Virus record (IMG/VR): IMGVR_UViG_3300037297_000066
Coordinates: 186,001-250,000 of that record
Direction: 5' to 3' (one strand)
DNA: 64,000 nt
Made by a program: the position numbers and the translations under genes. Positions 9,700 to 27,859 of this stretch are shown piece by piece; position 1 is the stretch's first letter; each line of letters starts with the position of its first letter. A model generated the notes under the pieces. That model had not been told where the DNA came from. It did not search any database and saw only the letters and a program-made list of their open reading frames with translations.

Positions 9700-10320
9700 G
9701 GAGGCCCCTCCCCCAAAAGGTCCCCCAGGGAGGGGTTGGGGCCTATGTAGGCGTATTCTCTCAGGGTTTCGGGGAGGCGTAAAAATCCTGCGGACAAAAA
9801 GGCCGGACATTTCGTGATGAAGAATCTTAGGGAGGTTTTGTACGTAAAGCCGTCTTTTCCCGGGGTTTTTGGATATACCGGCTCATTGGCCGAATCCGGC
9901 CCATGGGCAAAGCAACGATCAGGCCAAGGCACAGCTTTGAGATTCTGTCAATATTATTCGACTCCGGCCCTACGAATCATTGGTCATACCGGCCCACGGG
10001 TCATTTTAGGGCCGGGGCCCGGGGCTTCGCCGGGGCCGACGGCTGGAGGTTGCCCTGTTGGGGGGAGGGCCGGGGAATGGCGGAATCGAAGCAAGGAATT
10101 GACAACTCCCTATTTGGAAGATCCGGAATTTGGAAATCCCTAAGTTGGGCATTGCCGAATTACAAAATGCACAATCCCACCGCCGGCCCCTGGTGGGGGG
10201 AACCGAGGTGGGATCAGGTAGACAAAAAGGTGAGCGGCCCGGCCCTGGGCGTGGGGGGGAAACGCCTCTGGGGCCAGACCGCTCTGGAGCCTCGACAGTA
10301 GATCGGGCAGGTCGCCTTGT
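9700..10320. other. Non-coding region with 7 CCGGCCC heptamers and A/T tracts (origin or terminus candidate)
   Basis: No convincing ORF; heptamers at 9896, 9964, 9989, 10009(-), 10067(-), 10183, 10239. Confidence 0.4.
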
Positions 10321-10326
10321 CCAGAC

Positions 10327-10378
10327 AAAACGACTGACCCCCTCCAGACACAGCAGCCAATGAGGGGGTCATAGTCGT
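10327..10378 (-). terminator. Intrinsic terminator-like hairpin
   Basis: ACGACT-AT-GACCCCCTC...GAGGGGGTC-AGTCGT followed by TTT on the minus strand. Confidence 0.65.
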
Positions 10379-10452
10379 ACGCAGAGACTCGATTATAGTG
10401 CTACTCGATAGGGCCTCCGTTCCTTGATGGTTGTAGGGTTGTTGTTACGCTC

Positions 10453-10692: not shown

Positions 10693-10721
10693 ATTACACG
10701 TGAGAGGGTTGGATCTTAACC
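10693..10721 (-). promoter_or_regulatory. Class-A promoter 1
   Basis: GGTTAAGATC-N12-GTGTAAT, ATG after 6 nt. Confidence 0.8.
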
Positions 10722-10735
10722 CGGGCTCCTCGGAA

Positions 10736-11059
10736 TCAGTACGCCTCGGCCCAGCCGCCACACTTGGGGCACCGGATACGCTGACCGGGCCGGTAGCCGA
10801 AGGACAGGAGGTCCTCGCAGGCACCGCACTGGCACTCCCCGTTGCTGCTGCGTCGGGGCCGGGGGCTGCTGGTGCCCTTCGAGGATTCGGTCTGGACCAG
10901 GGTCACCTTGCCGTCGGTCCAGAGGACACGTTGCACTGTGGCTGTCCAGGTCTTGCCGGCCTTGGTGTTGATCTCGATGATGGCGCCTTGTTGAACTGAA
11001 CCCTGAACTCGGGCACCCCAGGAGCCGTCACGGAGCTTGGAGGGAGTTGCTTTCGTCAT
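10736..11059 (-). CDS. Small protein with Cys-rich Zn-binding C-terminus
   Basis: CQCGAC..CPKCG; motif A start. Confidence 0.8.
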   Translation of the reverse strand: MTKATPSKLRDGSWGARVQGSVQQGAIIEINTKAGKTWTATVQRVLWTDGKVTLVQTESSKGTSSPRPRRSSNGECQCGACEDLLSFGYRPGQRIRCPKCGGWAEAY

Positions 11060-11065
11060 GCCCTT

Positions 11066-11094
11066 ATTACACGTGAGGGGCTCCGATCTTAACC
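11066..11094 (-). promoter_or_regulatory. Class-A promoter 2
   Basis: Motif A, ATG after 6 nt. Confidence 0.8.
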
Positions 11095-11125
11095 CGGGCC
11101 CCTTTCAAAAAATCAGAGACGGCTG

Positions 11126-11154
11126 GGTTAAGATCCAACCCTCTCAGGTGTAGT
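11126..11154 (+). promoter_or_regulatory. Class-A promoter 3
   Basis: Motif A, ATG after 6 nt. Confidence 0.8.
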
Positions 11155-11160
11155 GAGATC

Positions 11161-11361
11161 ATGGCATACCCGTACAACAACTGGGCCATCAAGCACGACG
11201 AACTAGGATTCTACGACGGCACCCTCCACGGGAAGCCCTGGTTTGGGGCGGACCAGTATGACGCCCACGGCTACCGGACCCGGAAGGATGCCCAGGCTGT
11301 GATAGACGGGGACCCCGAAGGGTTCAAGAACGCCCGGCCAGTGAACCTGAAGAAGTTGTAG
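11161..11361 (+). CDS. Hypothetical protein (class-A cassette)
   Basis: Motif A start. Confidence 0.8.
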   Translation: MAYPYNNWAIKHDELGFYDGTLHGKPWFGADQYDAHGYRTRKDAQAVIDGDPEGFKNARPVNLKKL

Positions 11362-11524
11362 AGGGAAGCCCTGCTACGGCTCTGCCCAGAGCCTCCCCTA
11401 GGCTACCCTCAGGGAACAGGTCAGCAGCCCAGGCTCCTGCCTCTTGAATCTCAGCTCGAAGGCGACGCTTCCCAGCTGGGGTTCTGAGGTAGGCGGCCAG
11501 GGCCTGTTCTTCTTGTGGAGTCAT
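11324..11524 (-). CDS. Hypothetical protein
   Basis: MTPQEEQALAAYLRTPAGKRRL; last gene of a minus-strand operon. Confidence 0.6.
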   Translation of the reverse strand: MTPQEEQALAAYLRTPAGKRRLRAEIQEAGAWAADLFPEGSLGEALGRAVAGLPSTTSSGSLAGRS

Positions 11525-11530
11525 CTCGAC

Positions 11531-11578
11531 CCAGAGTAGGCCCCCAGGGAGGGGCTGTCTACTCCCTGGGGGCTCTGG
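11531..11578. terminator. Strong intergenic hairpin
   Basis: CCCCCAGGGAG/CTCCCTGGGGG 11-bp stem plus CCAGAG/CTCTGG. Confidence 0.55.
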
Positions 11579-11806
11579 TCAGATGTTGCGAATCAGGGCG
11601 TCCCGGCCCTTTCCAGTGGCAGCGTAGTGCCCCCTGGGGCCCCGGTGCACCCAGAGCTTCTTAGCCATCCTCAGGAGGGTAAGGGAGGCCCAGGCTGAGG
11701 CTGTCTGGGGAGGCTTGCCCCCGACGTCGATGCCCACCCGGGTGGGGGAGACGTAGCCGCCTTCGGCCACGAGATAGCCCAGGATGGCTTCTTCTTTGGA
11801 GGTCAT
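11579..11806 (-). CDS. Winged-helix-like DNA-binding protein
   Basis: AILGYL..SPTRVG..L.RM.K..V...RGHYAAT.KG. Confidence 0.65.
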   Translation of the reverse strand: MTSKEEAILGYLVAEGGYVSPTRVGIDVGGKPPQTASAWASLTLLRMAKKLWVHRGPRGHYAATGKGRDALIRNI

Positions 11807-12057
11807 GCGGCCTTCTTCTGGGACCGTTCCCGGCATTTCTTGAGTTGAGAGAGGATTGACTTGCCCTCCTCGGAGACTTCGTAGCGACGGCCGTGTTGGT
11901 CCACCAACCCGTGCCGAACCAACTTCTGGAGGGGAGAGGCGGCCCAGAGGGGGGCGATGCTATGGTGATGGTTACCGACCAAAACCCCGATCTTCGTGAG
12001 GGAGGTGGGGCCCCTGCGGGCCAGGAAGGCTAGGATCGATTCCTGTCGGAGGGTCAT
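11803..12057 (-). CDS. Winged-helix-like protein, paralogue of 11579
   Basis: SILAFL..LQKLVRHGLV..RRYEVSEEG. Confidence 0.65.
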   Translation of the reverse strand: MTLRQESILAFLARRGPTSLTKIGVLVGNHHHSIAPLWAASPLQKLVRHGLVDQHGRRYEVSEEGKSILSQLKKCRERSQKKAA

Positions 12058-12263
12058 CAGATCCTCACAATGGAGTCAGGGGCCACTCCGAAGTGGTCCA
12101 AGAGCCACTCTTCGGCCGTGTTCCTTCGGAGCTCGAAGGACAGGACGACCTCTCTGTTGCCCCCCACGATGTTGCTGGGCATGTCTGTGTGCAGGTAGAC
12201 CCGATCGACGCCCATCTTGTCGTAGACGACGTTGACCCGGGTGACTTGGAAGTGAGGAGTCAT
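12057..12263 (-). CDS. Hypothetical protein
   Basis: SD GAAAGGA upstream; downstream of class-A promoter 4. Confidence 0.75.
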   Translation of the reverse strand: MTPHFQVTRVNVVYDKMGVDRVYLHTDMPSNIVGGNREVVLSFELRRNTAEEWLLDHFGVAPDSIVRI

Positions 12264-12294
12264 TGGGTTCCTTTCAGGTGTGGAGCCTACTTCT

Positions 12295-12323
12295 ACTACA
12301 CGTGAGGGGGCTGGATCTTAACC
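12295..12323 (-). promoter_or_regulatory. Class-A promoter 4 (leadered)
   Basis: Motif A followed by about 25-nt leader with SD. Confidence 0.75.
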
Positions 12324-12324
12324 C

Positions 12325-12525
12325 TCACCGGAAGGTAACACTCCGACGCCTCTTGCACTCGACCAGAAGGCCCGCTGCCGACAGCTTCCGGAGGTAGCGG
12401 ATGGCCACCTCTCGGGAGGGGAGGCCCAAGGCTCTCCTGGCATCATGAGCCGTGAAGGGCCTGTCCGGGTAGACGCCTCGGAGGAAGTCAGCGTTCCGGG
12501 CGTCGTCCTGGGTTACCTTGGCCAT
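12325..12525 (-). CDS. Small HTH-like protein
   Basis: FTAHDARRALGLPS..RYLRKLSAAGLL; motif A start. Confidence 0.7.
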   Translation of the reverse strand: MAKVTQDDARNADFLRGVYPDRPFTAHDARRALGLPSREVAIRYLRKLSAAGLLVECKRRRSVTFR

Positions 12526-12531
12526 GCCCTT

Positions 12532-12560
12532 ATTACACGTGAGGGGGTTGGATCTTAACC
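12532..12560 (-). promoter_or_regulatory. Class-A promoter 5
   Basis: Motif A, ATG after 6 nt. Confidence 0.8.
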
Positions 12561-12577
12561 CTGATCGGAGAGAGGGG

Positions 12578-12769
12578 TCAGTCCTTCACGACCCGGGGCA
12601 TCATGCGAGCGGTAGCCCCGTACCTTCGGGCACGCTCGTTGGCCTGTTCTAGGGTGAGGCCCCGAGCTGAGATGTAGTGAGGCTCGCCCCCGATTCGGAC
12701 CTCCACGTGGTAGGTGGGCTCCTTGGGCTCCTCGGGGGAGATGTTCTTGGAAGTGTTGTCGGTTGCCAT
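12578..12769 (-). CDS. TYHVE..RGLTL..VVKD family protein
   Basis: Paralogue of 12940 and 13887; motif A start. Confidence 0.8.
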   Translation of the reverse strand: MATDNTSKNISPEEPKEPTYHVEVRIGGEPHYISARGLTLEQANERARRYGATARMMPRVVKD

Positions 12770-12775
12770 GCCCCT

Positions 12776-12804
12776 ATTACACGTGAGGGGGTTGGATCTT
12801 AACC
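12776..12804 (-). promoter_or_regulatory. Class-A promoter 6
   Basis: Motif A; perfect 12-bp hairpin GACCCCCGGGAG just upstream. Confidence 0.8.
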
Positions 12805-12906
12805 CTGAACGTAGTGACCCCCGGGAGTTTCTGAGGCTCCCGGGGGTCGGGGTTCGGAGTTCTAACAGATATACCCCACCATACACCGGAGCTCAGGGTT
12901 TGGAGC

Positions 12907-12943
12907 CAGGTTTTTTGAGGGGTCAGGTTTTTTGAGGGGTCAG
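12907..12943. repeat. 17-bp tandem duplication CAGGTTTTTTGAGGGGT
   Basis: Two adjacent copies at the gene end. Confidence 0.7.
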
Positions 12944-13263
12944 TCCTTCACGACCCAAGCTTTCATGGGATGGTACTTCTGAGCCCACCTCTGGGCCTCT
13001 TCGAGAGTACGCCCCCGAGGGGACACGACGACAGGGTAACTCCTCACATGGATCTCCACGTGAAAGGTGGGCTCTGGAGTGGGGTTCTTCTTGGCTTCCC
13101 ACCGGGCCAGGACGGCCTGGCACCGGGTGCAGTTGACGTGCTCCTTGGCGGACGTGGTGCTGTGAGCTCGTCGGTTCCCACACACGGGCCTTCCTCCCCC
13201 GGTTTGGGAGAAGTGCATCACGAGGCCCTTGCGGGTCTTTTTGCTGGGGGTGCCGGTTGCCAT
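12940..13263 (-). CDS. Zn-finger + VVKD family protein
   Basis: H..CG..CTRC then TFHVE..RGRTLEEA..VVKD. Confidence 0.8.
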   Translation of the reverse strand: MATGTPSKKTRKGLVMHFSQTGGGRPVCGNRRAHSTTSAKEHVNCTRCQAVLARWEAKKNPTPEPTFHVEIHVRSYPVVVSPRGRTLEEAQRWAQKYHPMKAWVVKD

Positions 13264-13269
13264 GCCCCT

Positions 13270-13298
13270 ATTACACGTGAGGGGGGCCGATCTTAACC
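13270..13298 (-). promoter_or_regulatory. Class-A promoter 7
   Basis: Motif A, ATG after 6 nt. Confidence 0.8.
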
Positions 13299-13432
13299 CG
13301 GCCCGTGGGTATAAAAACAGGCCCGACCCGAGACCCGAAGCACCCATAACTCCCCGTATGGGGGCCTCGGATCGGGGGAAAAACGGGGTGAATTTTCGAC
13401 CGGGGTTCGATATCAGAAATAGCCTGGCCCGG

Positions 13433-13461
13433 GGTTAAGATCCGAGGCTCCCAGGTGTATT
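13433..13461 (+). promoter_or_regulatory. Class-A promoter 8
   Basis: Motif A variant (GTGTATT), ATG after 6 nt. Confidence 0.75.
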
Positions 13462-13467
13462 AGGGGC

Positions 13468-13593
13468 ATGAGCAAGAAGACGATGGTCACCCTGGCTTGT
13501 TGGATGCTCGCCCTGGCAACCTCGTCTGCTCAGACACCCCCCAAGGCCCGGACAGTGGAGCTCGAAGCCACCCTGGTTCAGGCCACCCTGTGA
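13468..13593 (+). CDS. 41-aa signal-peptide-like protein (not in ORF track)
   Basis: MSKKTMVTLACWMLALATSSAQ...; motif A start. Confidence 0.65.
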   Translation: MSKKTMVTLACWMLALATSSAQTPPKARTVELEATLVQATL

Positions 13594-13601
13594 GGACCCC
13601 C

Positions 13602-13835
13602 ATGAACGCCTACCTGATTCACAAGGACAAGATGGCCCGGATCGCCTTCCCCGATGACGCCCCTTCCGAGGTAGTGGACCGGATCAAGCGGGCCGTGGCC
13701 TCCCACATGACCCACCCCGATGGGATCCGACGCCCGGAGATGAGGGTGTGTGGGTGCCGGGTCTACTGGGCCTCCCCACTGTACTACTCGGACGTCCCCT
13801 CGGACCGCATCGAGTCGGCCTCGGACTACGTCTGA
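13602..13835 (+). CDS. Hypothetical protein
   Basis: GAGG SD before MNAYLIH. Confidence 0.7.
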   Translation: MNAYLIHKDKMARIAFPDDAPSEVVDRIKRAVASHMTHPDGIRRPEMRVCGCRVYWASPLYYSDVPSDRIESASDYV

Positions 13836-13851
13836 GAATCGCTCCTCTCCG

Positions 13852-13880
13852 GGTTAAGATCCAACCCTCTCAGGTGTAGT
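13852..13880 (+). promoter_or_regulatory. Class-A promoter 9
   Basis: Identical to copies 3, 10, 11. Confidence 0.8.
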
Positions 13881-13886
13881 GAGATC

Positions 13887-14156
13887 ATGGCAAGAAAACC
13901 TCGTCCTGACTGCCCCAACTGTGGGCATTCCCGGTGGACCTACAGGCTGTCCCAGCACTACTGGGCTTGTCAGAGGTGCCATGCCACCTGGGCGACGAAC
14001 GCCTACCAGAACAGGCCCCAAACCTACCACGTGGAGACCCGTCCACGTTACTCCGTCTCCAAGCGGGGGCTCACTCTCGTCGAGGCCCAACACAAGGCCC
14101 GAAAGTACAACTCCACCCATTTCCCCCAAGCCCACGTCGTGAAGGACGCATCATGA
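13887..14156 (+). CDS. Zn-ribbon + VVKD family protein
   Basis: CPNCG..CQRC, TYHVE..RGLTL..VVKD. Confidence 0.8.
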   Translation: MARKPRPDCPNCGHSRWTYRLSQHYWACQRCHATWATNAYQNRPQTYHVETRPRYSVSKRGLTLVEAQHKARKYNSTHFPQAHVVKDAS

Positions 14157-14362
14157 ACAAGAACGAAGTTTGGAAACGCTACCGTCGAGGCGACCACATC
14201 ACGGACCACGAGCTGGAAGTGCTCCTCAAAGACACGAAGCGGGCTCTGGACTCCCTGGTCTACCGGAACGACTACGGAGTCGTCACCCTGGCCCTGGCTG
14301 CGGATGTGGCCGCCCTGGAGGGGTACCAGCGTTCCCGGGAAATCCGGAAGCTCGAAGGCTGA
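14153..14362 (+). CDS. Hypothetical protein
   Basis: ATGA overlap, SD AAGGA. Confidence 0.75.
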   Translation: MNKNEVWKRYRRGDHITDHELEVLLKDTKRALDSLVYRNDYGVVTLALAADVAALEGYQRSREIRKLEG

Positions 14363-14374
14363 GCCCCCTCTCCG

Positions 14375-14403
14375 GGTTAAGATCCAACCCTCTCAGGTGT
14401 AGT
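14375..14403 (+). promoter_or_regulatory. Class-A promoter 10
   Basis: Motif A, ATG after 6 nt. Confidence 0.8.
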
Positions 14404-14409
14404 GAGATC

Positions 14410-14637
14410 ATGGCACAGAACAAGACCCCTGGTGGATTCAAGGTAACCCCCGCCCGTGCTGGGCAACCCCCGGTGGGTTCCAAGGTGGCCGTCAAGGCCC
14501 GAGTCAACCCCCTGGACTGGCCCTACAAGGACCGGGAGGGGACGGTCCTCGGCTACTCGGTCCCCCACGGGTTTGCCGTCCTCTCCTCCCATGGAGAGGA
14601 GCTCCTCATCCACCCCGAGAACCTGGACCTGGTCTGA
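14410..14637 (+). CDS. Small SH3/KOW-like beta protein
   Basis: VGSKVAV..YKDREGTVLG..LIHPENLDLV. Confidence 0.7.
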   Translation: MAQNKTPGGFKVTPARAGQPPVGSKVAVKARVNPLDWPYKDREGTVLGYSVPHGFAVLSSHGEELLIHPENLDLV

Positions 14638-14655
14638 GCAGAAATCGTAGGCCCG

Positions 14656-14684
14656 GGTTAAGATCCAACCCTCTCAGGTGTAGT
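14656..14684 (+). promoter_or_regulatory. Class-A promoter 11
   Basis: Motif A, ATG after 6 nt. Confidence 0.8.
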
Positions 14685-14690
14685 GTAGGT

Positions 14691-14981
14691 ATGACCAACG
14701 CAACCCTCCGAATGGTCCCTCAGGAAGCGGTAGACCCCCGGACCACTGAGGCCCGCTACAGCCACCCAGCCGTCTGCCACTGGTTCCCGACCACGCAGGC
14801 TTGGACCTGGGACGGAGGGGATGCCCTGGTGGTCGTGACCGGCCACTGCCCCGAGGTTCAGCCCTACGTGATCCTCAGGGTCGAGGACAAGGTTCACGTG
14901 GTCCCCGCTGAGGGGCTCACCTCGGCCGCTAGGGCCTTCGGGCTCGACCTGGCTCTGGCCCCCCTCCCCGAGGAGAACTAA
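14691..14981 (+). CDS. Hypothetical protein
   Basis: Motif A start. Confidence 0.75.
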   Translation: MTNATLRMVPQEAVDPRTTEARYSHPAVCHWFPTTQAWTWDGGDALVVVTGHCPEVQPYVILRVEDKVHVVPAEGLTSAARAFGLDLALAPLPEEN

Positions 14982-15418
14982 TGCAGGTCGTCATCCTGAG
15001 AGGGCTCCCGGGGTCAGGCAAGAGCTACATGGCCCGTACCATTGAGGGGGCCGTGGTCTGCTCGACGGACGACTACTTCGTGGACGGGGACGGACACTAC
15101 AAGTGGGAGGGAGCCAAGGTCCACTGGGCTCACAAGCAGTGCTTCCGGAAGTTCCTGCGGACCCTCCAGGAGGGCACGGCTCAGGTGGTGATTGTGGACA
15201 ACACTAACCTCCTGGCTTGGGAGATCGCCCCCTACTACCAGCTGGCTGAGTCCCTCGGGCACCAGGTGGTGATTGTGACCATCGAGGCCCCGGTGGAGCT
15301 CTGCAAGCGTCGGAACGTCCACGAGTGCCCCCCTGAGGTCATCGACCGGAGATACCGGGCTATGGTCCTGGAGCAGCTACCCCCCTACTGGGAGCACATT
15401 GTTCACCGGGAGGGTTAA
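14981..15418 (+). CDS. AAA_33 / N4BP2-like P-loop (polynucleotide) kinase
   Basis: LRGLPGSGKS Walker A, STDDYF, IVDNTN, RNVH. Confidence 0.88.
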   Translation: MQVVILRGLPGSGKSYMARTIEGAVVCSTDDYFVDGDGHYKWEGAKVHWAHKQCFRKFLRTLQEGTAQVVIVDNTNLLAWEIAPYYQLAESLGHQVVIVTIEAPVELCKRRNVHECPPEVIDRRYRAMVLEQLPPYWEHIVHREG

Positions 15419-15441
15419 GATCTGGGCCCCTCACGTGTAGT
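15413..15441 (+). promoter_or_regulatory. Class-A promoter 12 (no start codon at +1)
   Basis: Motif A; predicted +1 at G15448. Confidence 0.75.
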
Positions 15442-15447
15442 TATGGT

Positions 15448-15633
15448 GAACGGACGACATACCAGGACACGCCGAGAACAGCCTAGTGAGAGGTTCTGAC
15501 CGGCAGCGGCCCACGGGGGCGGGGAGATCTAGGCCCTGGAGAAACCCTTTGACAGATCCCCCCGAGGCCGGGCCTCATTAGCGGTCAGTCAGTCTCGGTA
15601 CTGGGGTCTCGCCTTGTGGGTTCTATGTCGTTC
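15448..15633. ncRNA. Candidate convergent sRNA pair with long central hairpin
   Basis: Two facing class-A promoters; both predicted transcripts start GAACG..ACATA; nested stems 15496-15588. Confidence 0.55.
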
Positions 15634-15639
15634 CCTTCC

Positions 15640-15668
15640 ATTACACGTGAGGCCCTCAGATCTTAACC
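15640..15668 (-). promoter_or_regulatory. Class-A promoter 13 (no start codon at +1)
   Basis: Motif A; predicted +1 at 15633. Confidence 0.75.
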
Positions 15669-15856
15669 TGAGGGGGGCGGAAATTACGCTTTGACCCCGG
15701 GAGGCTCCCGCACCGATCGCAACACTCCCCGGGCTGTCCCTGGGAGTCGGTGCAGAGGACCCCTTCCCGGGGGAGGGGGCGGCCACAGTTTGAGCAGTGG
15801 CGGCCCTGCCAGTAGGAGGGGTCGGGGGAGGGAGGCTTGGGGGAGGCGTGGGGCAT
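15656..15856 (-). CDS. Small Cys-rich Zn-finger protein
   Basis: CSNCG..CCDRCG; motif A start. Confidence 0.7.
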   Translation of the reverse strand: MPHASPKPPSPDPSYWQGRHCSNCGRPLPREGVLCTDSQGQPGECCDRCGSLPGSKRNFRPPQVKI

Positions 15857-15862
15857 GTCCCT

Positions 15863-15891
15863 ACTACACGTGAAAGGGCCAGATCTTAACC
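15863..15891 (-). promoter_or_regulatory. Class-A promoter 14
   Basis: Motif A, ATG after 6 nt. Confidence 0.8.
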
Positions 15892-15896
15892 CATGG

Positions 15897-16058
15897 AGAA
15901 AGGAAAGCCCCAAGCAGGGGGCCAGGGGCTTTCCGGTATCCTGTCGATCAGCATGTCAAAAATTCCGGAGTCGATCCCGGATTACGCTTTAGCAGGCTAA
16001 CACCTACTTCGGAGGCCCTCTGGCCTGGGCTCTCGGTGCGGGTTCTTGATTCCTCATG
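15897..16058 (-). ncRNA. Candidate ~160-nt sRNA or 17-codon peptide transcript
   Basis: Promoter A15, micro-ORF 16004-16057, ends in GGAAAGCCCC/GGGGCTTTCC-TTT hairpin. Confidence 0.45.
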
Positions 16059-16064
16059 TTCTCT

Positions 16065-16093
16065 ACTACACGTGAGGGGCCCAGATCTTAACC
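16065..16093 (-). promoter_or_regulatory. Class-A promoter 15
   Basis: Motif A, ATG after 7 nt. Confidence 0.75.
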
Positions 16094-16350
16094 CGTGGTG
16101 TATGGTAGGTGTGTATTTCAGGTCTCTAAGGTAAGGAAGGGCTCCTCCGGGGGCCCTTCTCGCTATTTTCCCTTTGGACAGGCTCTAGACGCATGAGGGC
16201 AGTTCTACGCCGGCTTCGACGTCGGCTCATACTACGGTGGTACCAGCGGTGTGCCTGCTGTGGGAGGGTGTACTGTCGGGCTTCCCGTCGGGCCGGGGAC
16301 GGAGTATGCTCAGCCACCTGCCAGGTATTGATTGACTCAGGGACTGAGGT

Positions 16351-16536
16351 ATGGAGCTCACATACATCGCATCGACCGTCGGGGTGATAGTAGGACTTGC
16401 CCTTGGGTTGTGGGTGGGTGAGATCCGAAGTAGTCGAGCATACCGAAGAGGGGTTGAGGATGAGCACCGGAGGGCAGGCCGGTGTTGGGTGAGGCAGCAG
16501 GTCGAGGGGCAGCTGCCCCCCGGAGTAGGTCAGTAG
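16351..16536 (+). CDS. Small membrane protein
   Basis: N-terminal TM, AYRRGVEDE; GAGGT SD. Confidence 0.6.
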   Translation: MELTYIASTVGVIVGLALGLWVGEIRSSRAYRRGVEDEHRRAGRCWVRQQVEGQLPPGVGQ

Positions 16537-17035
16537 GCCAATCGACAATCGAGTGTCGATTTCGGTTGCCCGGGGTGGACGGGTGTGCCTGCGGTTCAAC
16601 CACCGGCCCGCCGTAAAAAAACCGCTCCATTAACTTTTTCGGTTGTACCGAGAGTGGAAATGGGCACATTCAATGTCCGTGAATCCAGAAACTGTCGGGG
16701 GGTCAAAATCCCAGTAATTCAGACCCTCCTTGGGGGGAGGGGGACCCTTTTGGAGTCCCTGAGCTCTGGAATGGATCTCGAAATTTTCTAGGGTTCGGAA
16801 ATTTCTGGGAGATCTGGGTTAAACCAGGGGTTTGGCTCATGCTCCCCTGGGGGGCCAAGCAGATTCCCTAGCCTGGGTTGGTAGTTCTGGGGGCCGTAGT
16901 GTACAGTGATGGAGGCAGGGCCCTCTTTTGTGCCCACCTCTTTGGCACCGGGTCCGTCATTGCCCGTTATCTTTCCGGGGGGTCCTGCCACTTACTTCTA
17001 GCCACGAGCCTTTTTTTAGGGCTACCTTCGGGGCC

Positions 17036-17290
17036 ATGGTCAACAACAAGAAGCCGGGCCGTCCCCCGACCCCCAAGAAGTCTCAGTTACTCCCTCCTCA
17101 AGTGACCACGGTTGCCCAATGGTACCGGACCGGACTTTTCAATAGCGAAGAGGAAGCCAGGGGGGCGTTCAGACTCGCTCACCAGCAAGGGCTCGATGGG
17201 ATGGGGACAGGGGTTTCGGCGTGGATGGGGTTGCACGAGCAGGAGTACGACTCCTGGATGCGAGACGACTCCCTCCCTCCGAAGAGGTAA
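17036..17290 (+). CDS. Hypothetical protein with AT-hook-like KPGRP
   Basis: MVNNKKPGRPP..WMGLHEQEYDSW. Confidence 0.7.
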   Translation: MVNNKKPGRPPTPKKSQLLPPQVTTVAQWYRTGLFNSEEEARGAFRLAHQQGLDGMGTGVSAWMGLHEQEYDSWMRDDSLPPKR

Positions 17291-17346
17291 CATTTCTCAG
17301 AGCCCGTCTCCTGACTCTATGAGGGGGCCCTGAGGGGTTTGGCTGA

Positions 17347-17498
17347 CCCGATGGGCCCTCACACCTCCAGGGGAGAGAAAGGCTCTCTGGGGGCGTTCTC
17401 GTGGGGGTGGCGGGGCCTTAGGGGTTGCATGGTTCCTCTGGGGTCCCGCCCTCTCCTAGGAGTCCCATGGTTCTGGGGGTGTGAGCCTCGGGATTTTT
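17347..17498 (+). ncRNA. Candidate multi-stem structured RNA
   Basis: 13-bp outer and 16-bp inner stems fully paired only with + strand G-U pairs; T-tract after. Confidence 0.55.
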
Positions 17499-17521
17499 GG
17501 CCCGGTGGACTTTTTGGCTAG

Positions 17522-18277
17522 TTAGGCCGTCTGGACTGGCCAGTAAAAGGCTTCCCCTTCCAGCTCGAACCTAGTACCGGGTTTGACTCGGTAGGAGGGG
17601 CTCTTGACGCCTACGAAGCGGACTTCCTCGCAATGGTATCTGAGGGCATCGAGGAGCACAGGCTCTTTGGGCCTACAACCGAACACATCGGTCACACGAT
17701 CTTGGAGGGTACCCAAGTCGAGGGTGTCCTCTTGCAGGAGGATAGCGACTTGTTTTTCCAGGTCATTTGGGGGGAGGAAGCGGAAGGGCCCTGAGGGTTC
17801 TTGGCTGAGGCGCAGCTGCAGGGTGAGCAGGGCATCTTCCCCACTCCTTGAGCCCAAGTTAGGCCATTTGTCTTTACGCAGGTCACGGCAGACTTTTTGG
17901 CCGTGGGTGAGGACCAAGGGGATGTCGTGGAGCAGGGCTGCTTCGAGGAGGGCTTCCCAATCCTCCGAGTCTTGGTGTTGGGTGAGGGCCAAGATGTCGT
18001 GGTAGGCGAGGTAGACCTGTTTCCAGGAGCGGCAATTGGAGAAGCAGGCCCCGAAGGTAGCGGCATCAATCAGGCAGAGGGCCAGTTCTTCGTCGTCCAG
18101 GGATTCGATGACCTCGACAGCTTGCCCCAGGGTGAGGAATTCTTCCTCTCCGAAGACGAGGGCTGTCAGGCAGGCAGCGGGGGTTATCTTCAGCAAGTCA
18201 GCCAGGGCTTGGAGGTTCTTCTGGAAGGCTTGGGGGTTGTTGACGGGCCATTCGAGGGAGATGGTTGTATTGGGCAT
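17522..18277 (-). CDS. Hypothetical protein
   Basis: 251 aa; ATG after GGTGTATGGT. Confidence 0.8.
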   Translation of the reverse strand: MPNTTISLEWPVNNPQAFQKNLQALADLLKITPAACLTALVFGEEEFLTLGQAVEVIESLDDEELALCLIDAATFGACFSNCRSWKQVYLAYHDILALTQHQDSEDWEALLEAALLHDIPLVLTHGQKVCRDLRKDKWPNLGSRSGEDALLTLQLRLSQEPSGPFRFLPPNDLEKQVAILLQEDTLDLGTLQDRVTDVFGCRPKEPVLLDALRYHCEEVRFVGVKSPSYRVKPGTRFELEGEAFYWPVQTA

Positions 18278-18296
18278 GCCTCACCATACACCGGGG

Positions 18297-18506
18297 CTAC
18301 CAGGCACCGACGTCGCAACTGATGCCTTGGGGCCAGGGGAGCTGGAGGAGGACTGGGCCATCTTCGTCTTGGGGACCTTCCACGACACAGAGGCCGCTCC
18401 CTCCCTCGATGAAAATGTGGGGGTCCTGGGCCCCCTGGGCTTTGGCTGTTTGGATGCAGTCTTGGAGGAGTTTCTCCCACCGGCGAGCCAGTTGTTTTTG
18501 GGTCAT
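18297..18506 (-). CDS. Hypothetical protein
   Basis: ATG 6 nt after GGTGTACCCT. Confidence 0.7.
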   Translation of the reverse strand: MTQKQLARRWEKLLQDCIQTAKAQGAQDPHIFIEGGSGLCVVEGPQDEDGPVLLQLPWPQGISCDVGAW

Positions 18507-18512
18507 GGGTAG

Positions 18513-18537
18513 AGGGTACACCGGTTTGGTGTATGGT
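18513..18537. promoter_or_regulatory. Back-to-back class-B promoter pair
   Basis: AGGGTACACC-ggttt-GGTGTATGGT between divergent ATGs. Confidence 0.7.
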
Positions 18538-18544
18538 GGAGGGT

Positions 18545-18817
18545 ATGTCGAAAAACTCAACGCAGCTCGACCAACTGCGAGCCGAGACGGGTGCCGCTTT
18601 GGAACGTTACGGAGTGGCTTGTATGTCTTTGGCCAAGGCGATGGTGGAATACGAAATGGAACATAGCTCGGTTCCTCCTCTCCACTACTCGAAAGACGAT
18701 CCCAGGATGACTCGTATCATCGCCGCTCACAGGGAGATCGATAGAACGGAGCGTCTTGCAAGAGAGGCCAAGGTCCGCCTCCAGGAGGCTGAGACTTCTT
18801 CAGAGGTGGTGGAGTAA
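18545..18817 (+). CDS. Hypothetical helical protein
   Basis: Class-B start. Confidence 0.75.
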   Translation: MSKNSTQLDQLRAETGAALERYGVACMSLAKAMVEYEMEHSSVPPLHYSKDDPRMTRIIAAHREIDRTERLAREAKVRLQEAETSSEVVE

Positions 18818-18844
18818 AAAGATCCCCAACTTGGGGATCTTTTT
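18816..18844. terminator. Bidirectional intrinsic terminator
   Basis: AAAAAGATCCCCAA-C-TTGGGGATCTTTTT perfect inverted repeat. Confidence 0.8.
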
Positions 18845-18861
18845 GGTGTACTCTCCTGGGG

Positions 18862-19115
18862 ATGGGAAGAAGAACGCTGCCCTGGCCTTTGGGGATGCCC
18901 CGGACTCGGGAGAACGAGCATTTGTACCAATCGCATGTGGCGTTGGTATTGGGTTGGCCGGTTCGGTCTTTCTGGCACTGGCTCAGGAGTTTTGGGGGAC
19001 GTTCATGAAGAGGGGAGTCAAGACGCAGCTTCTGGTGCTTGAGATTGCGGTACTCTTGGAGGGGGTGGCACTCATGTGGCATTTGGTCCACACGCATGGG
19101 GATTGGTTTTGGTGA
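18862..19115 (+). pseudogene. Two-TM membrane protein, possibly frameshifted
   Basis: Promoter-defined ATG 18862 is out of frame with the TM-coding frame ending 19115. Confidence 0.35.
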
Positions 19116-19214
19116 GCTTTGCCTCAAAAGGGGATTTTCTGGTTTGACAAGGCAAGCTTTTTCGGAAGAAATGAGGGGGAAACAACTCCAGCTCTGCGGT
19201 TTTAAGGCAGAGAC
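19116..19214 (-). repeat. ~99-bp dispersed repeat D, copy 1
   Basis: Near-identical to 40108-40206 and to the reverse complement of 43514-43611. Confidence 0.9.
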
Positions 19215-19215
19215 C

Positions 19216-19752
19216 TCAGTCAACCAGTAGGGGGTGGCAGTACATTGGGAAGCGGGTGAAGTCTATGGGGGGCCTCACCTGTTTCTCCCCTGAGGGTGGT
19301 TTCCAGTGGAGCTGCTCATCACGTTCATCGGGGAGGTAGGCCCACCCTGGGGGGATTTCTCGGGAGACGTAGACCCTGAGCTTGTTGTAGTTACCGATGT
19401 GACCATCTTGGAGTTCTTCTCGACGTAATTCGGGGGTGAACTCGGGGTCATGCCGGAGGGTAACCAGGTCGATAGCGTTGAGGTAGCAGATACCTTCTCT
19501 GTAGGAGAGGGTGTCTTGGAGTTCCTGGAGGGTAGCTCGGGTTAGATTTCCGGCTGCTGTCTCCATGGCTTGCCACATATCGAGTTCAGGCTCGGTGGCT
19601 TCTCGGGTCTCACTTTTCCAGCCTGCGTGTTCGGTGAGCCACCCGATGCGTACATGGGGGTTGGGGCTCATCTCGATGTGGAAGGCCAGGTGGCAGCGTC
19701 CGGCGATACGTTTGGCTCGGACGGTATGGGAATCCCAGGGCTCGTAGGGCAT
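19216..19752 (-). CDS. Hypothetical protein with capsid-like C-terminal segment
   Basis: YLNAIDLVTLR..REELQDGHIGNY..VYVSREIPPG; resemblance by eye only. Confidence 0.7.
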   Translation of the reverse strand: MPYEPWDSHTVRAKRIAGRCHLAFHIEMSPNPHVRIGWLTEHAGWKSETREATEPELDMWQAMETAAGNLTRATLQELQDTLSYREGICYLNAIDLVTLRHDPEFTPELRREELQDGHIGNYNKLRVYVSREIPPGWAYLPDERDEQLHWKPPSGEKQVRPPIDFTRFPMYCHPLLVD

Positions 19753-19826
19753 GGGCCCAGTCTACCATTTCCGGCCCCTGAGGGAGCTCTTGAGTCCCGG
19801 GGTTCGGAGATTTTCTGGGGGGTCCG

Positions 19827-19855
19827 GGTTAAGATCTGGGCTTCCCAGGTGTAGT
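19827..19855 (+). promoter_or_regulatory. Class-A promoter 16
   Basis: Motif A, ATG after 6 nt. Confidence 0.8.
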
Positions 19856-19861
19856 AGGGGC

Positions 19862-20080
19862 ATGGCTACAAAGTCCGAAACAACCTGGAGTACGGTTGTT
19901 GAAGCCAAGAAGGGTCTTCGCCAACATTTGGGGCGTCTCTCATGGCTCAAGGTGGTCACGGCTAGCTATGACGCTCAAGGCTACCACCTTCTGGTCAAGG
20001 TACGACGAATCGATGCTGAGGTACGGGCGGCCGTGGGGGAGACTTTCCAAGGGGTTCGGGTAAAGACCGAACTAGGGTAA
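19862..20080 (+). CDS. Small alpha/beta protein (F.G.PV family)
   Basis: Similar to 30557 and 31298. Confidence 0.75.
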   Translation: MATKSETTWSTVVEAKKGLRQHLGRLSWLKVVTASYDAQGYHLLVKVRRIDAEVRAAVGETFQGVRVKTELG

Positions 20081-20088
20081 GGCAAGGC

Positions 20089-20370
20089 ATGACCACGAAA
20101 GTTGTTCAAGAAGAGAGCTGGGAAAACGGTGATCTTAAGGTAGGCTTCAAGATCATCTGGGAGTCTGGGGAAGAAGGTTCTTCTGAGGGGGGCTACGTGG
20201 TAGAGGTTTTTGAGCTCCTGATCGGGCTACCTATTCGGGTGACCCGGTTGTCCCGGGCTTCTGACCTAGTAGTGGCGCTTTTTGCGTGTGAAGGGGTCAA
20301 GGCTGGGTTTTACGCTGCTGGGTTCAAGCCTTTGGTTGGTGTGGCTGGAGGAGAGCTGACCAGGTCATAA
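20089..20370 (+). CDS. Hypothetical protein
   Basis: Operonic ORF. Confidence 0.65.
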   Translation: MTTKVVQEESWENGDLKVGFKIIWESGEEGSSEGGYVVEVFELLIGLPIRVTRLSRASDLVVALFACEGVKAGFYAAGFKPLVGVAGGELTRS

Positions 20371-20391
20371 TCCCAGGCACAGGTAAGACGG

Positions 20392-20799
20392 TCACGGGAG
20401 CTCGGCGACTGCCTGAAGGAGCTCGGGTGAGGGGCGGATACTCTGGGGTTCAGGGTAGCTACAGAGGATTAGCTCGGTATCTGGGGTCAGGCTTTTGAGG
20501 AAGCGCCGGCACTCCTTGTAGACGGGGGAACCTTCCAGGGCTTTCAGGGCAGTTTCCAGCTGGTCTGGGTGGTCATTGAGGTTTTGGATGAGCCAGCATT
20601 GGAGCTCTTGGGGGGAGATTTCCAGATCTTGTATAGCCTGGAGCATTCGGTTGATGGGGGGTTCTAGTTTCCCCATGAGTTCCAGCAAGAAGGCGGTGAT
20701 TTCTTCACCGTCGAACTCTTCACACAGTTGTTCGGCGGCAGCTTCGGTCGAGGTGGTTTGGTCTTTGACCAGCTGTTCGATTCGTTGTTTCAGGTCCAT
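20392..20799 (-). CDS. Hypothetical helical protein
   Basis: 135 aa; GTGTAGAAT upstream. Confidence 0.7.
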   Translation of the reverse strand: MDLKQRIEQLVKDQTTSTEAAAEQLCEEFDGEEITAFLLELMGKLEPPINRMLQAIQDLEISPQELQCWLIQNLNDHPDQLETALKALEGSPVYKECRRFLKSLTPDTELILCSYPEPQSIRPSPELLQAVAELP

Positions 20800-20846
20800 G
20801 GGGTTTCTCGACGGGGATTCTACACGATTTGGTGTATGGTGGGGGT

Positions 20847-21161: not shown

Positions 21162-21170
21162 GAGGTAGTC

Positions 21171-21515: not shown

Positions 21516-21529
21516 ATGTGGGGAGTCCG

Positions 21530-21558
21530 GGTTAAGATCCGGGTCCCCCAGGTGTAGT
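21530..21558 (+). promoter_or_regulatory. Class-A promoter 17
   Basis: Motif A, ATG after 6 nt. Confidence 0.8.
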
Positions 21559-21564
21559 AGGGGC

Positions 21565-21960: not shown

Positions 21961-21968
21961 GTACCACC

Positions 21969-22163: not shown

Positions 22164-22172
22164 GGGGATCCT

Positions 22173-22376: not shown

Positions 22377-22414
22377 ACCAGACACCGGGGGGGTTAAGAG
22401 GGATTTCTAGGCCC

Positions 22415-22894: not shown

Positions 22895-22900
22895 GGATCC

Positions 22901-23452: not shown

Positions 23453-23484
23453 CGCTTTCTCTTTTATCACAATGGTTGGGTGTC

Positions 23485-27853: not shown

Positions 27854-27859
27854 GTAGGC

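What the first reader, a model, noticed from the sequence alone, without database searches (positions are those of the whole stretch)
15413..15668. Two facing class-A promoters enclosing a non-coding long hairpin: a sense/antisense sRNA pair
Seen: promoters 12 (+) and 13 (-) converge over 186 bp with no start codon at either predicted +1. Both transcripts would begin alike (GAACGGACGACATAC vs GAACGACATAG), with about 45 nt of A/C-rich sequence containing CGAGA. They then enter a shared nested hairpin (CTGACCG/CGGTCAG, GGCCC/GGGCC, CGGGG(A)GATCT/AGATCCCCCG; 15496-15588). Inference: two early sRNAs sharing a bidirectional terminator, or a dsRNA/decoy RNA.
Basis: partly seen in the sequence, partly recalled or inferred. 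Interest (0 to 1): 0.8.

Follow-up and report, generated by a model that had tools for sequence, protein, structure and literature searches.

The report
Facing orphan promoters around a palindrome
In a 437-kb uncultivated wetland phage, two copies of the phage's own 39-copy promoter point at each other across a 186-base imperfect palindrome with no gene in it, so they probably make a pair of overlapping untranslated RNAs, but no transcript data could be found and it has no normal terminator.

Summary
The motif GGGTTAAGATC-N9-CA[C/G]GTGTA occurs 20 times in the window (0.08 expected) and about 39 times in the 437,331-bp phage genome. In 28 of the 39 copies a start codon lies 9-10 nt after the motif, which suggests leaderless mRNAs of 41-279 codons. 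The copies at 15415-15439 (+) and 15642-15666 (-) face each other. Their predicted starts (15448, 15633) are 186 nt apart and neither has a start codon. Between them lies a significant imperfect palindrome.

A non-coding payload is well supported. A shared bidirectional terminator is not: the hairpin has no U-tract on either strand, while canonical terminators lie about 300 nt away. No RNA runs were listed and Rfam gave no match. The element is real DNA in independent assemblies, but only in close strains; one related lineage lacks it.

My best reading (confidence 0.38) is a convergent, mutually antisense pair of untranslated RNAs at the junction of two convergent operons. Rivals are a junction hairpin, a decayed cassette relic, an origin-related element and micro-ORFs. 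I rate it a new variant of a known kind, interest moderate.

The parts
15412..15441 (+). Promoter copy P(+). The core motif is at 15415-15439. The TAA inside GGTTAAGATC is the stop codon of the upstream kinase-like gene.
   Evidence: Matches the pattern with 0 mismatches. It is one of 39 copies in the genome. It is a 100% inverted repeat of 16065-16094 (I2).
15448..15495 (+). Predicted 5' tail of transcript A (GAACGGACGACATACC...CCGAGAAC...). It is A/C-rich, T-poor and mostly unpaired when the RNA is cut after the hairpin.
   Evidence: The +1 is inferred from the fixed 9-10-nt motif-to-ATG distance. Composition is and the fold.
15496..15588 (.). Core of the imperfect palindrome: a nested G+C-rich hairpin that forms on both strands. 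Neither strand has a U-tract after it. The apex (15531-15547) is the only part that differs in the variant strains.
   Evidence: Minimum-energy folds are -42.4 and -45.7 kcal/mol, z = -1.3 and -1.8. The apex differences at 15533, 15542 and 15543 (plus 15540 in X10) are.
15589..15633 (-). Predicted 5' tail of transcript B (GAACGACATAGAACCCACAAGGCGAGACCCCAG...). It carries a motif shared with the neighbouring small unit U.
   Evidence: similarity of B to U, p about 0.004; the motif occurs only twice in the genome.
15640..15668 (-). Promoter copy P(-). The core motif is at 15642-15666. It overlaps the stop codon of the Zn-ribbon gene.
   Evidence: Matches the pattern with 0 mismatches.
15443..15499 (+). 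18-codon ORF MVNGRHTRTRREQPSERF. Its ATG lies 5 nt upstream of the predicted +1. An in-frame GTG at 15446 would give 17 codons.
   Evidence: It is probably not translated from P(+).
15585..15641 (-). Mirror 18-codon ORF MEGNDIEPTRRDPSTETD. Its ATG lies inside the -10-like part of P(-).
   Evidence: In the X10 strain, ATG becomes GTG and a 2-nt insertion gives a stop after 6 codons.
14981..15418 (+). Left flanking gene: a 145-aa P-loop kinase-like protein (AAA_33; phrog ATPase / polynucleotide kinase). It is the last gene of the plus-strand operon that runs into the element.
15656..15856 (-). Right flanking gene: a 66-aa Zn-ribbon-like protein read from promoter 15865-15889 (-). It has no terminator before the element.
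   Evidence: In L018 the changes within its cysteine motifs are synonymous.
15897..16091 (-). Neighbouring unit U: promoter at 16067-16091, a 161-nt RNA with a 17-codon leaderless ORF, and two canonical terminators. It is a paralogue of B's 5' tail and shows what a terminated short RNA looks like in this phage.
16135..16160 (+). The strongest canonical terminator in the 9-23 kb region. It lies on the plus strand, and the nearest copy of this promoter motif upstream of it on that strand is P(+) at 15415.

Best explanation
The element is a self-contained non-coding module. Two copies of the phage's own high-copy promoter face each other across an imperfect palindrome, and it sits exactly where a plus-strand operon (ending with the kinase-like gene) and a minus-strand operon (ending with the Zn-ribbon gene) meet.

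Proposed mechanism (all steps inferred):
- Each promoter launches an untranslated RNA. Its first 45 nt or so are A/C-rich and single-stranded, and it then enters the G+C-rich nested hairpin.
- The hairpin has no U-tract, so the polymerases are not released as they would be at a canonical terminator. They run toward each other.
- The products are therefore mutually antisense RNAs. They are complementary over at least the 93-nt hairpin and over up to 186 nt. Each is also antisense to the read-through 3' end of the opposing operon.
- The likely effect is regulatory or insulating: polymerase collision plus RNA duplex formation and cleavage. This would limit antisense read-through between the two operons. 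The free 5' tails might also act in trans.

What is shown: the promoter copies, the lack of coding capacity, the palindrome and hairpin, the lack of a U-tract, and the modularity.
What is inferred: that the promoters fire, where the RNAs end, and what they do.
For: - Both motifs match the consensus fully and have a purine at the predicted +1.
- They are the only 2 of 39 copies without a downstream protein ORF. The other promoter-proximal ORFs are 41-279 codons, or a leadered gene follows.
- The spacer is a significant imperfect palindrome. In RNAs cut after the hairpin, the 5' tails stay unpaired.
- The module keeps both promoters in strain L018/X10, even though an extra promoter + 71-aa gene cassette is inserted between the kinase gene and P(+). 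P(+) therefore belongs to the element and not to the upstream gene.
- Between the window and L018 there are 0 differences in about 190 nt of arms, against about 3-4% in the flanks.
- B's tail shares a 22-24-nt motif with the neighbouring unit U, with a 2-nt length difference that breaks the reading frame. The similarity is therefore at nucleotide level. U itself looks like a terminated small RNA.
- Neither flanking operon has a terminator before the element.
Against: - There is no transcript evidence of any kind; no RNA run was listed.
- Hairpin energy is barely better than shuffles, z = -1.3 to -1.8.
- The element is found only in near-identical strains. In the X5 lineage nothing was laid at >=80% likeness (zero depth over 15456-15840) and a different leaderless gene follows P(+). 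The element is therefore dispensable and no covariation test was possible.
- The low divergence of the arms could come from a recent recombination block. Difference-free stretches of about 126 nt also occur in the flanking sequence.
- The apex changes can be read as helix building or helix loss, each p about 0.03, so the direction is unknown.
- The polymerase that reads the motif is unidentified.
- Rfam has no match.
Confidence: 0.38

Rival explanations
1. Junction hairpin. The functional part is the G+C-rich nested hairpin. It would serve as the common 3'-end, stabilising or processing structure, or as a non-canonical two-way terminator, for the two convergent operons. The two promoters would be secondary: extra barriers against read-through, or simply cassette borders.
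For: The kinase operon and the Zn-ribbon gene both lack any terminator before the element, so both must transcribe into it. The hairpin forms on both strands. Its stems are unchanged in the variant strains.
Against: There is no U-tract on either side, while the same phage uses canonical hairpin + T-run terminators nearby and more often than shuffles (28 vs 14.8 +/- 3.5). This reading does not explain why two full-consensus promoters, with homologous 45-nt tails, are kept pointing into the hairpin.
Confidence: 0.2
2. Relic of cassette shuffling. A U-like cassette (promoter + short payload) was duplicated to give B and then duplicated in inverted orientation to give A, and both have decayed. The promoters stay at consensus only through gene conversion with the other ~37 copies. 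The element has no function of its own.
For: Promoter-bounded cassettes are clearly the unit of gain and loss. L018 and X10 have an extra cassette exactly at the promoter, and X5 has a different gene after the same promoter and no element. B is a paralogue of U. The two arms are about 65-70% alike, as expected after decay of an inverted duplication. The module is dispensable in a related lineage.
Against: Both promoters and the arms are better conserved than the flanking protein genes between strains. Two strong orphan promoters firing antisense into neighbouring genes should be costly if they are useless.
Confidence: 0.2
3. DNA-level element tied to replication. The orphan promoters would prime or activate an origin, or the palindrome would act as a cruciform or protein-binding site. 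From my own knowledge, the models are the T7 phiOL/phiOR orphan promoters, or ColE1 RNA II/RNA I, where two facing promoters about 108 bp apart make an untranslated primer and its antisense.
For: The element lies in the trough of the genome-wide cumulative GC skew. The global minimum is at genome 195,726, which is window position about 9,726, with a plateau to about 16,000. The sign of the skew there does not follow gene orientation. Four GATC sites, as AGATCT/AGATCC, are placed symmetrically in the element.
Against: The sharp skew switch is at about 9.7 kb, 5.7 kb away from the element. The element is G+C-rich (about 62%) and has no A+T-rich unwinding stretch. In my own reading of the sequence I saw no iterons, and the repeat search of 15300-16200 reported no tandem repeat family inside the element. 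A related lineage lacks the element, which is unexpected for an essential origin.
Confidence: 0.08
4. Micro-protein genes. The 17-18-codon ORFs (15443/15446-15499 on the plus strand; 15641-15585 on the minus strand) would be translated, like the 17-codon leaderless ORF of unit U.
For: Both arms carry an ORF of the same length ending at the homologous TGA. They share T-R-R-[E/D] and P-S, with an Arg codon CGC against AGG. U has a 17-codon ORF with its ATG at the canonical +10 position.
Against: Both ATGs lie upstream of the predicted +1. The minus-strand ORF is cut to 6 codons in strain X10. B and U are similar at nucleotide level but out of frame with each other. Every other promoter-proximal ORF has >=41 codons.
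Confidence: 0.06
5. Type I toxin-antitoxin-like pair: convergent promoters giving a small toxin mRNA and an antisense RNA that overlap at their 3' ends.
For: The architecture alone: convergent small transcripts with overlapping 3' ends.
Against: No hydrophobic small ORF exists on either strand. All candidates have a mean Kyte-Doolittle hydropathy <=0.3 and are Arg/Pro/Gly-rich. There is no shared intrinsic terminator.
Confidence: 0.02

Closest known systems
ColE1-type RNA II / RNA I (facing promoters about 108 bp apart; from my own knowledge)
   Same: Two face-to-face promoters 100-200 bp apart. Both products are untranslated, structured and mutually complementary. There is no ORF between the promoters.
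   Different: There is no evidence of an origin here. The skew switch is 5.7 kb away. RNA I ends at an intrinsic terminator, whereas this element has none. Here the two RNAs are also homologous to each other because the spacer is a palindrome. The setting is a 437-kb phage, not a plasmid.
Face-to-face pR/pL switch of coliphage 186 and P2, and transcriptional interference between convergent promoters in general (PMC5001618)
   Same: Convergent promoters close enough to interfere with each other through collision or 'sitting-duck' effects.
   Different: Those promoters drive protein-coding operons beyond each other and are controlled by repressors. Here both promoters belong to the same class, no protein gene follows either one, and no regulator is known.
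Phage cis-antisense small RNAs (lambda oop, P22 sar; from my own knowledge)
   Same: A short untranslated RNA read against a neighbouring transcript from a dedicated promoter.
   Different: Those are single antisense RNAs with intrinsic terminators that target a defined mRNA. Here there is a symmetric pair and no terminator.
Type I toxin-antitoxin loci with convergent transcripts (par of pAD1, bsrG/SR4; from my own knowledge)
   Same: Convergent small transcripts that overlap at their 3' ends.
   Different: There is no hydrophobic toxin ORF and no shared intrinsic terminator.
Bidirectional intrinsic terminator
   Same: A G+C-rich hairpin between convergent transcription units that forms on both strands.
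   Different: It lacks the flanking A-tract/U-tract. It is much longer (93 nt, nested). It is flanked by promoters that point into it.
6S RNA (Rfam RF00013)
   Same: If transcript A ran its full 186 nt, it would be an end-to-end imperfect hairpin of about the size of 6S RNA.
   Different: No Rfam match even at E <= 10. The fold has many small internal loops and no large central bubble.

Membership tests
Promoter family of this phage (GGGTTAAGATC-N9-CA[C/G]GTGTA) | Full match to the 25-nt motif, including the upstream GG(G) | tested here: met
   Both copies have 0 mismatches. The upstream bases are GGG for P(+) and AGG for P(-).
Promoter family of this phage (GGGTTAAGATC-N9-CA[C/G]GTGTA) | A start codon 9-10 nt after the motif (leaderless gene), or a leader followed by a protein ORF | tested here: not met
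   28 of 39 copies have a start at +9/+10 and the others have leadered genes. The two copies of the finding have neither.
Promoter family of this phage (GGGTTAAGATC-N9-CA[C/G]GTGTA) | Actual initiation of transcription at the predicted +1 | not testable with these tools
   No RNA run was listed. The polymerase or sigma factor that reads the motif is unidentified.
Bidirectional intrinsic terminator | A stable G+C-rich hairpin on both strands | tested here: met
   -42.4 and -45.7 kcal/mol for 15496-15588, although z is only -1.3 and -1.8.
Bidirectional intrinsic terminator | A U-tract directly 3' of the stem on both strands | tested here: not met
   The tails are TCAGTCTCGG (plus strand) and AACCTCTCAC (minus strand). 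The terminator scan did not flag the hairpin, but it did flag 15981-15964, 15923-15906 and 16135-16160 nearby.
Cis-antisense RNA pair (ColE1 RNA I/II-like) | Two facing promoters with overlapping, untranslated, complementary products | tested here: inconclusive
   The geometry and the lack of ORFs are met. The existence and the ends of the transcripts are untested.
Cis-antisense RNA pair (ColE1 RNA I/II-like) | Link to a replication origin or a defined target gene | tested here: inconclusive
   The element lies in the skew trough but 5.7 kb from the switch. Its only certain complements are the read-through 3' ends of the flanking operons.
Type I toxin-antitoxin | A small hydrophobic (membrane) peptide ORF on one transcript | tested here: not met
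   All ORFs of >=12 codons are hydrophilic or neutral, with hydropathy from -1.94 to 0.3.
6S RNA | A match to the Rfam covariance model; a large central bubble | tested here: not met
   No hit at E <= 10 or at the gathering score. The fold has only small internal loops.
Any Rfam family | A covariance-model match | tested here: not met
   Only two chance-level miRNA hits, E = 3.5 and 8.7. Nothing in the window reaches a gathering score.

The most novel reading that the evidence does not exclude
Early in infection the two facing promoters would produce either a perfect double-stranded RNA of about 186 bp or a 186-nt end-to-end hairpin RNA. That RNA would act as a decoy or sponge, for example by titrating a host double-strand-specific nuclease or an RNA-sensing defence, or by binding RNA polymerase in the manner of 6S RNA. 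This would be a purpose-built 'dsRNA generator' cassette in a huge phage.
Probability: 0.06. Interest if true: 0.8.

Novelty: new variant of a known kind. Interest (0 to 1): 0.42.

Why it matters
Non-coding RNAs of lytic and huge phages are almost unmapped. The phiKZ differential RNA-seq study, for example, predicted one small RNA and could not confirm it by northern blot (PMC8244752).

This locus gives a sharply defined and testable case:
- a phage with a 39-copy, nearly invariant promoter that mostly drives leaderless small genes;
- one 680-bp island where three of four such promoters carry non-coding or 17-codon payloads;
- two of those three arranged head-on over a palindrome.

If the RNAs exist, the locus would show how a huge phage uses convergent transcription, rather than terminators, to separate or regulate opposing operons. 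It would also provide a natural symmetric antisense pair. If the RNAs do not exist, the locus documents how promoter-bounded cassettes shuffle and decay in such genomes.

Tried and rejected
- Rfam, at permissive E-values on 14500-16700 and at gathering scores on the whole window: nothing.
- Sigma-70 consensus promoter scan: 0 sites. The motif is not a textbook sigma-70 promoter.
- blastn of 14900-16200 against 50,697 phage records: no match.
- Promoter motif in IMG/VR viral contigs: only single, chance-level hits.
- Promoter motif in GTDB genomes: 4 single hits, so no host or prophage lead.
- Promoter motif in metagenome contigs: this found the close strain in Ga0272441/Ga0272442. That gave the L018 comparison, but no relatives distant enough for covariation.
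- Kinase-gene relatives: one 36%-identical copy in a 472-kb phage (L008), with a different context and no element. The GTGTAGG repeats I noticed there are not enriched in that genome, 17 vs 12 in the control.
All others are <50% identical.
- RNA sequencing runs: none listed.
- blastn-short of the element against its own genome: only the 18-nt GGGAACGACAYAGAA match at genome 140425-140442, which is the leader of a protein gene, so there is no third copy.
- Phage RNA polymerase or sigma factor: no match to the multisubunit Rpb1-domain-2 family PF00623. The T7-type search (PF00940) was uninformative because its control also failed. One sub-threshold Sigma70_r2 match was found.
- Type I toxin: rejected, no hydrophobic ORF.
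- Apex 'covariation': the three strain differences all fall in one 5-6-bp helix. They are equally unusual as helix building or helix loss (p about 0.03 each way). With no outgroup, they are not evidence of selection.
- Inversion of the spacer: no supporting joints in the laid contigs. The only 'opposite strands' joint is a 34-nt promoter cross-match at a contig end.
Full report
WHERE THE WINDOW LIES

The window is bases 186,001-250,000 of a 437,331-bp IMG/VR virus record with direct terminal repeats, estimated 100% complete. DNA runs that hold the region come from wetland, marsh and marine-sediment metagenomes. The closest sequences are strain-level variants, 93-98% identical, in the metagenomes Ga0272441 and Ga0272442. 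Nothing similar is in the 50,697 GenBank phage records.

THE PROMOTER FAMILY

- The motif TTAAGATC-N9-CA[C/G]GTGTA, usually preceded by GGG, occurs 20 times in the window against 0.08 expected. It occurs 34 times exactly in the genome and 39 times at <=1 mismatch.
- The positions next to the motif are also conserved..GGGTTAAGATCcgggcCcCTCAcGTGTAgTaggggcATGg.
- In 28 of the 39 copies a start codon lies 9 or 10 nt after GTGTA, and the ORFs that follow have 41-279 codons. Two more copies have an ATG at +12 or +16, and six have a leader of about 15-60 nt before a protein gene.
- A fixed and very short distance leaves no room for a Shine-Dalgarno spacer. The natural reading is a promoter whose +1 is the A of the ATG, giving leaderless mRNA. 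That is an inference; no transcript data exist.
- Which polymerase reads the motif is unknown. It does not fit the sigma-70 consensus scan. No match to the multisubunit Rpb1-domain-2 family (PF00623) was found. The T7-type search (PF00940) was uninformative because its control also failed. The only sigma-like match is sub-threshold.
- Hairpin + T-run terminators are about twice as frequent as in shuffles (28 vs 14.8 +/- 3.5). This suggests, but does not prove, a bacterial-type polymerase.

THE OBSERVATION

- P(+) is at 15415-15439 and P(-) at 15642-15666, both with 0 mismatches.
- Applying the +9 register puts the starts at G15448 and G15633, 186 nt apart, with no start codon at either.
- The transcripts would begin GAACGGACGACATAC and GAACGACATAG. 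Each has a 45-48-nt A/C-rich, T-poor tail containing CGAGA.
- The nested hairpin CTGACCG/CGGTCAG, GGCCC/GGGCC, CGGGG(A)GATCT/AGATCCCCCG (15496-15588) is the minimum-energy structure on both strands.
Aligning the left half to the reverse complement of the right half scores 28 against -4.8 +/- 8.2, reached by 0 of 1000 shuffles. Either strand folds end to end into one long hairpin.
- The folding energies are not impressive for 62% G+C, with z = -1.3 to -1.8. The evidence for structure therefore rests on the symmetry and not on the free energy.
- The DNA is real. Contigs from separate runs and assemblies span it: X3 with 0 differences over 15208-15728, X10, and L018.

IS IT NON-CODING?

- These are the only two of 39 promoter copies with nothing to express.
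- The ORFs inside the element are 16-31 codons, hydrophilic or Arg/Pro/Gly-rich.
- The two mirror 18-codon ORFs (15443-15499 on the plus strand, 15641-15585 on the minus strand) have the same length and end at the homologous TGA. However, both ATGs lie upstream of the predicted +1.
- In strain X10 the minus-strand ORF changes from ATG to GTG and gains a 2-nt insertion that stops it after 6 codons.
- A GTG at 15446, two bases before the predicted +1, could give a 17-codon leaderless ORF on the plus strand. I cannot exclude this, and it is kept as a low-probability rival.

THE SURROUNDINGS

- On the left, a series of plus-strand promoter + small-gene cassettes (13435, 13854, 14377, 14658) ends with a 145-aa P-loop kinase-like gene at 14981-15418. 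Its TAA stop is the TAA of the P(+) motif.
- On the right, three minus-strand cassettes follow one another with 202-223-nt spacing (D1).
  - P16067 drives unit U, a 161-nt RNA with a 17-codon leaderless ORF and two canonical hairpin + T-run terminators.
  - P15865 drives a 66-aa Zn-ribbon-like protein. Its changes in L018 are synonymous within the cysteine motifs.
  - P15642 is transcript B of the finding.
- The element therefore sits exactly where two convergent transcription units meet, and neither unit has a terminator before it.
- B's 5' tail shares AGAACCCRCA(N1-3)CGAGASCCCAG with U (p about 0.004). These are the only two copies in the genome, and they lie at nearly the same distance from their promoters. 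A 2-nt length difference breaks the reading frame, so the similarity is at nucleotide level.
- This 680-bp island thus holds three of the genome's promoter copies whose payloads are non-coding or micro-ORF, and it holds all such copies in the genome.
- The GGGAACGACAYAGAA start of B recurs once, at genome 140,425-140,442. There it is simply the 30-nt leader of a protein gene.

THE TERMINATOR QUESTION

- The hairpin has no U-tract on either strand. The sequence after the outer stem is TCAGTCTCGG on the plus strand and AACCTCTCAC on the minus strand.
- The terminator scan does not flag the hairpin. It does flag 15981-15964 and 15923-15906 (minus strand, in U) and 16135-16160 on the plus strand, the best-scoring terminator in 14 kb.
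- The phage therefore has ordinary terminators and does not use one here.
- The nearest copy of this promoter motif upstream of the plus-strand terminator at 16135 is P(+) itself. This fits a plus-strand transcript that can run antisense through B, the Zn-ribbon gene and U. It is only circumstantial, because the phage has a second promoter class (see below).

VARIATION AMONG STRAINS

- In L018, and likewise in run X10, an extra cassette is inserted between the kinase gene and P(+). It consists of a promoter plus a 71-aa leaderless gene, 242 nt in all. The element keeps both of its own promoters. The module is therefore discrete.
- In the X5 lineage the same promoter is followed by a different leaderless gene, and nothing was laid on 15456-15840 at >=80% likeness. 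The element and the Zn-ribbon gene are therefore dispensable accessory DNA. Promoters are the breakpoints of cassette exchange.
- Between the window and L018 there are 22 differences in 15412-16207 and 48 in 14365-15441. Only 3 fall in the 202-nt element, all at the apex (15533 G>T, 15542 and 15543 A>G). The roughly 190 nt of arms have none, where about 6-7 would be expected.
- This is suggestive of constraint. However, difference-free runs of about 126 nt also occur in the flanking sequence, so a recent recombination block is an alternative explanation.
- The three apex differences all lie in one 5-6-bp helix that exists in L018 and X10 and not in the window. Random triple substitutions reach that effect in about 3% of trials in either direction. 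Without an outgroup I cannot say whether a helix was built or lost, so I draw no conclusion about selection from them.

WHAT IT MOST LIKELY IS

The element is a non-coding, promoter-flanked palindromic module whose two promoters fire toward each other. With no U-tract terminator, the result would be colliding polymerases and mutually antisense RNAs. These RNAs are also antisense to the read-through tails of the two opposing operons. The effect would be an insulating or regulatory junction, possibly with trans-acting 5' tails that carry the CAC..CGAGA motif shared with U. Only the sequence features are shown; firing, RNA ends and function are inferred.

Rivals:
- Junction hairpin (0.20). The hairpin alone is the functional 3'-end structure for the two operons.
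- Decayed cassette relic (0.20). The element is the remains of an inverted duplication of a U-like cassette, with the promoters kept at consensus by gene conversion. Cassette turnover and absence in X5 support this.
- Origin-related or DNA-level element (0.08). The locus lies in the genome-wide GC-skew trough, and the skew there is independent of gene orientation. Against it, the sharp switch is at about 9.7 kb, 5.7 kb away, the element is G+C-rich, and in my own reading of the sequence I saw no iterons.
- Micro-ORFs (0.06).
- A type I toxin-antitoxin pair (0.02), rejected for lack of a hydrophobic ORF.

COMPARISON WITH WHAT IS KNOWN

From my own knowledge, the nearest architecture is ColE1 RNA II/RNA I, with facing promoters about 108 bp apart and untranslated complementary RNAs. 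Also close are convergent-promoter interference switches such as pR/pL of phage 186 (PMC5001618), phage antisense RNAs (oop, sar) and convergent type I toxin-antitoxin loci. The element differs from all of them in four ways:
- it is symmetric, with two copies of the same promoter class and homologous arms;
- it lacks any terminator;
- it lacks a coding partner;
- it sits in a huge lytic-type phage.

It matches no Rfam family. I therefore rate it a new variant of a known kind and not a member of any named family.

VERDICT

Interest is moderate (0.42). The anatomy is clean and unusual, but there is no expression evidence, no deep conservation, and a credible relic explanation.

Noticed in passing
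window 10695-28575 and 42585; genome-wide 39 copies (e.g. genome 64825, 140446-144438, 174229-176906, 183766-184197, 252685-268553): A nearly invariant 28-nt promoter motif, GGGTTAAGATC-N9-CA[C/G]GTGTA. In 28 of 39 copies a start codon follows exactly 9-10 nt later, which implies leaderless mRNAs for mostly small genes of 41-279 codons. Its internal TAA often serves as the stop codon of the upstream gene. In the 10.7-16.1 kb cluster, five of the six plus-strand copies carry CAGGTG and all minus-strand copies carry CACGTG.
   Followed up: partly
window 15897-16091 (-): Unit U: a consensus promoter, a 17-codon leaderless ORF (MRNQEPAPRAQARGPPK) and two canonical terminator hairpins. It looks like a 161-nt small RNA or a micro-peptide gene. 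Its 5' part is a paralogue of transcript B of the finding, and its ORF part is unchanged in L018.
   Followed up: partly
window 19116-19214 (-), 40107-40206 (-), 43512-43615 (+); genome 57083-57183, 147285-147383, 178596-178696; extra copies in L014:5507-5611, L015:4901-4998, L019:3548-3652: A dispersed repeat of about 100 nt. It starts with a terminator-like hairpin (TCTCTGC..GCAGAG followed by a T-rich stretch) and, in the copy I read, ends about 16 nt before an ATG. It looks like a terminator + promoter module of a second promoter class. Variant strains carry copies where this genome has none, so it is gained and lost like a small mobile element.
   Followed up: partly
L018:3257-3527 (inserted at window 15441/15412); run X10; run X5 at window 15441: Promoter-bounded cassette turnover. 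L018 and X10 carry an extra promoter + 71-aa leaderless gene between the kinase gene and the element. In X5 a different leaderless gene (MGKTTLET...) follows the same promoter. The promoters act as recombination breakpoints.
   Followed up: partly
window about 9,700 (genome 195,726); plateau to about 16,000: The genome-wide minimum of cumulative GC skew, with a sharp switch from -0.28 to +0.16 at about 9.7 kb. Minus-strand genes to the right of it (17522-18277, 19216-19752, 20392-20799, 26145-27140) have positive plus-strand skew, while minus-strand genes to the left have negative skew. The skew therefore does not follow gene orientation, and this is a candidate replication-origin region. The stretch at about 9810-10450 appears to be non-coding.
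   Followed up: partly
window 15412-15441 and 16065-16094: A perfect 30-bp inverted repeat, formed by two promoter copies, flanks a 623-bp segment that holds the element, the Zn-ribbon gene and unit U. It could allow inversion of the segment. No inversion joints were seen in the laid contigs.
   Followed up: partly
window 29528-29628 (+): ARAGORN calls a tRNA-Gly(GCC) that is 101 nt long, unusually long for a tRNA. It overlaps the start of a 311-aa ORF (29564-30499). It may contain an intron or be a false call.
   Followed up: no
genome 271310-272470 (L031:511-1671): A 386-aa ORF with a sub-threshold match to Sigma70 region 2 (15-17 bits; cut-off 24). It is the only sigma-like candidate found in the genome. 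No match to the multisubunit RNA-polymerase family tested (PF00623) was found, and the T7-type search (PF00940) was uninformative.
   Followed up: partly
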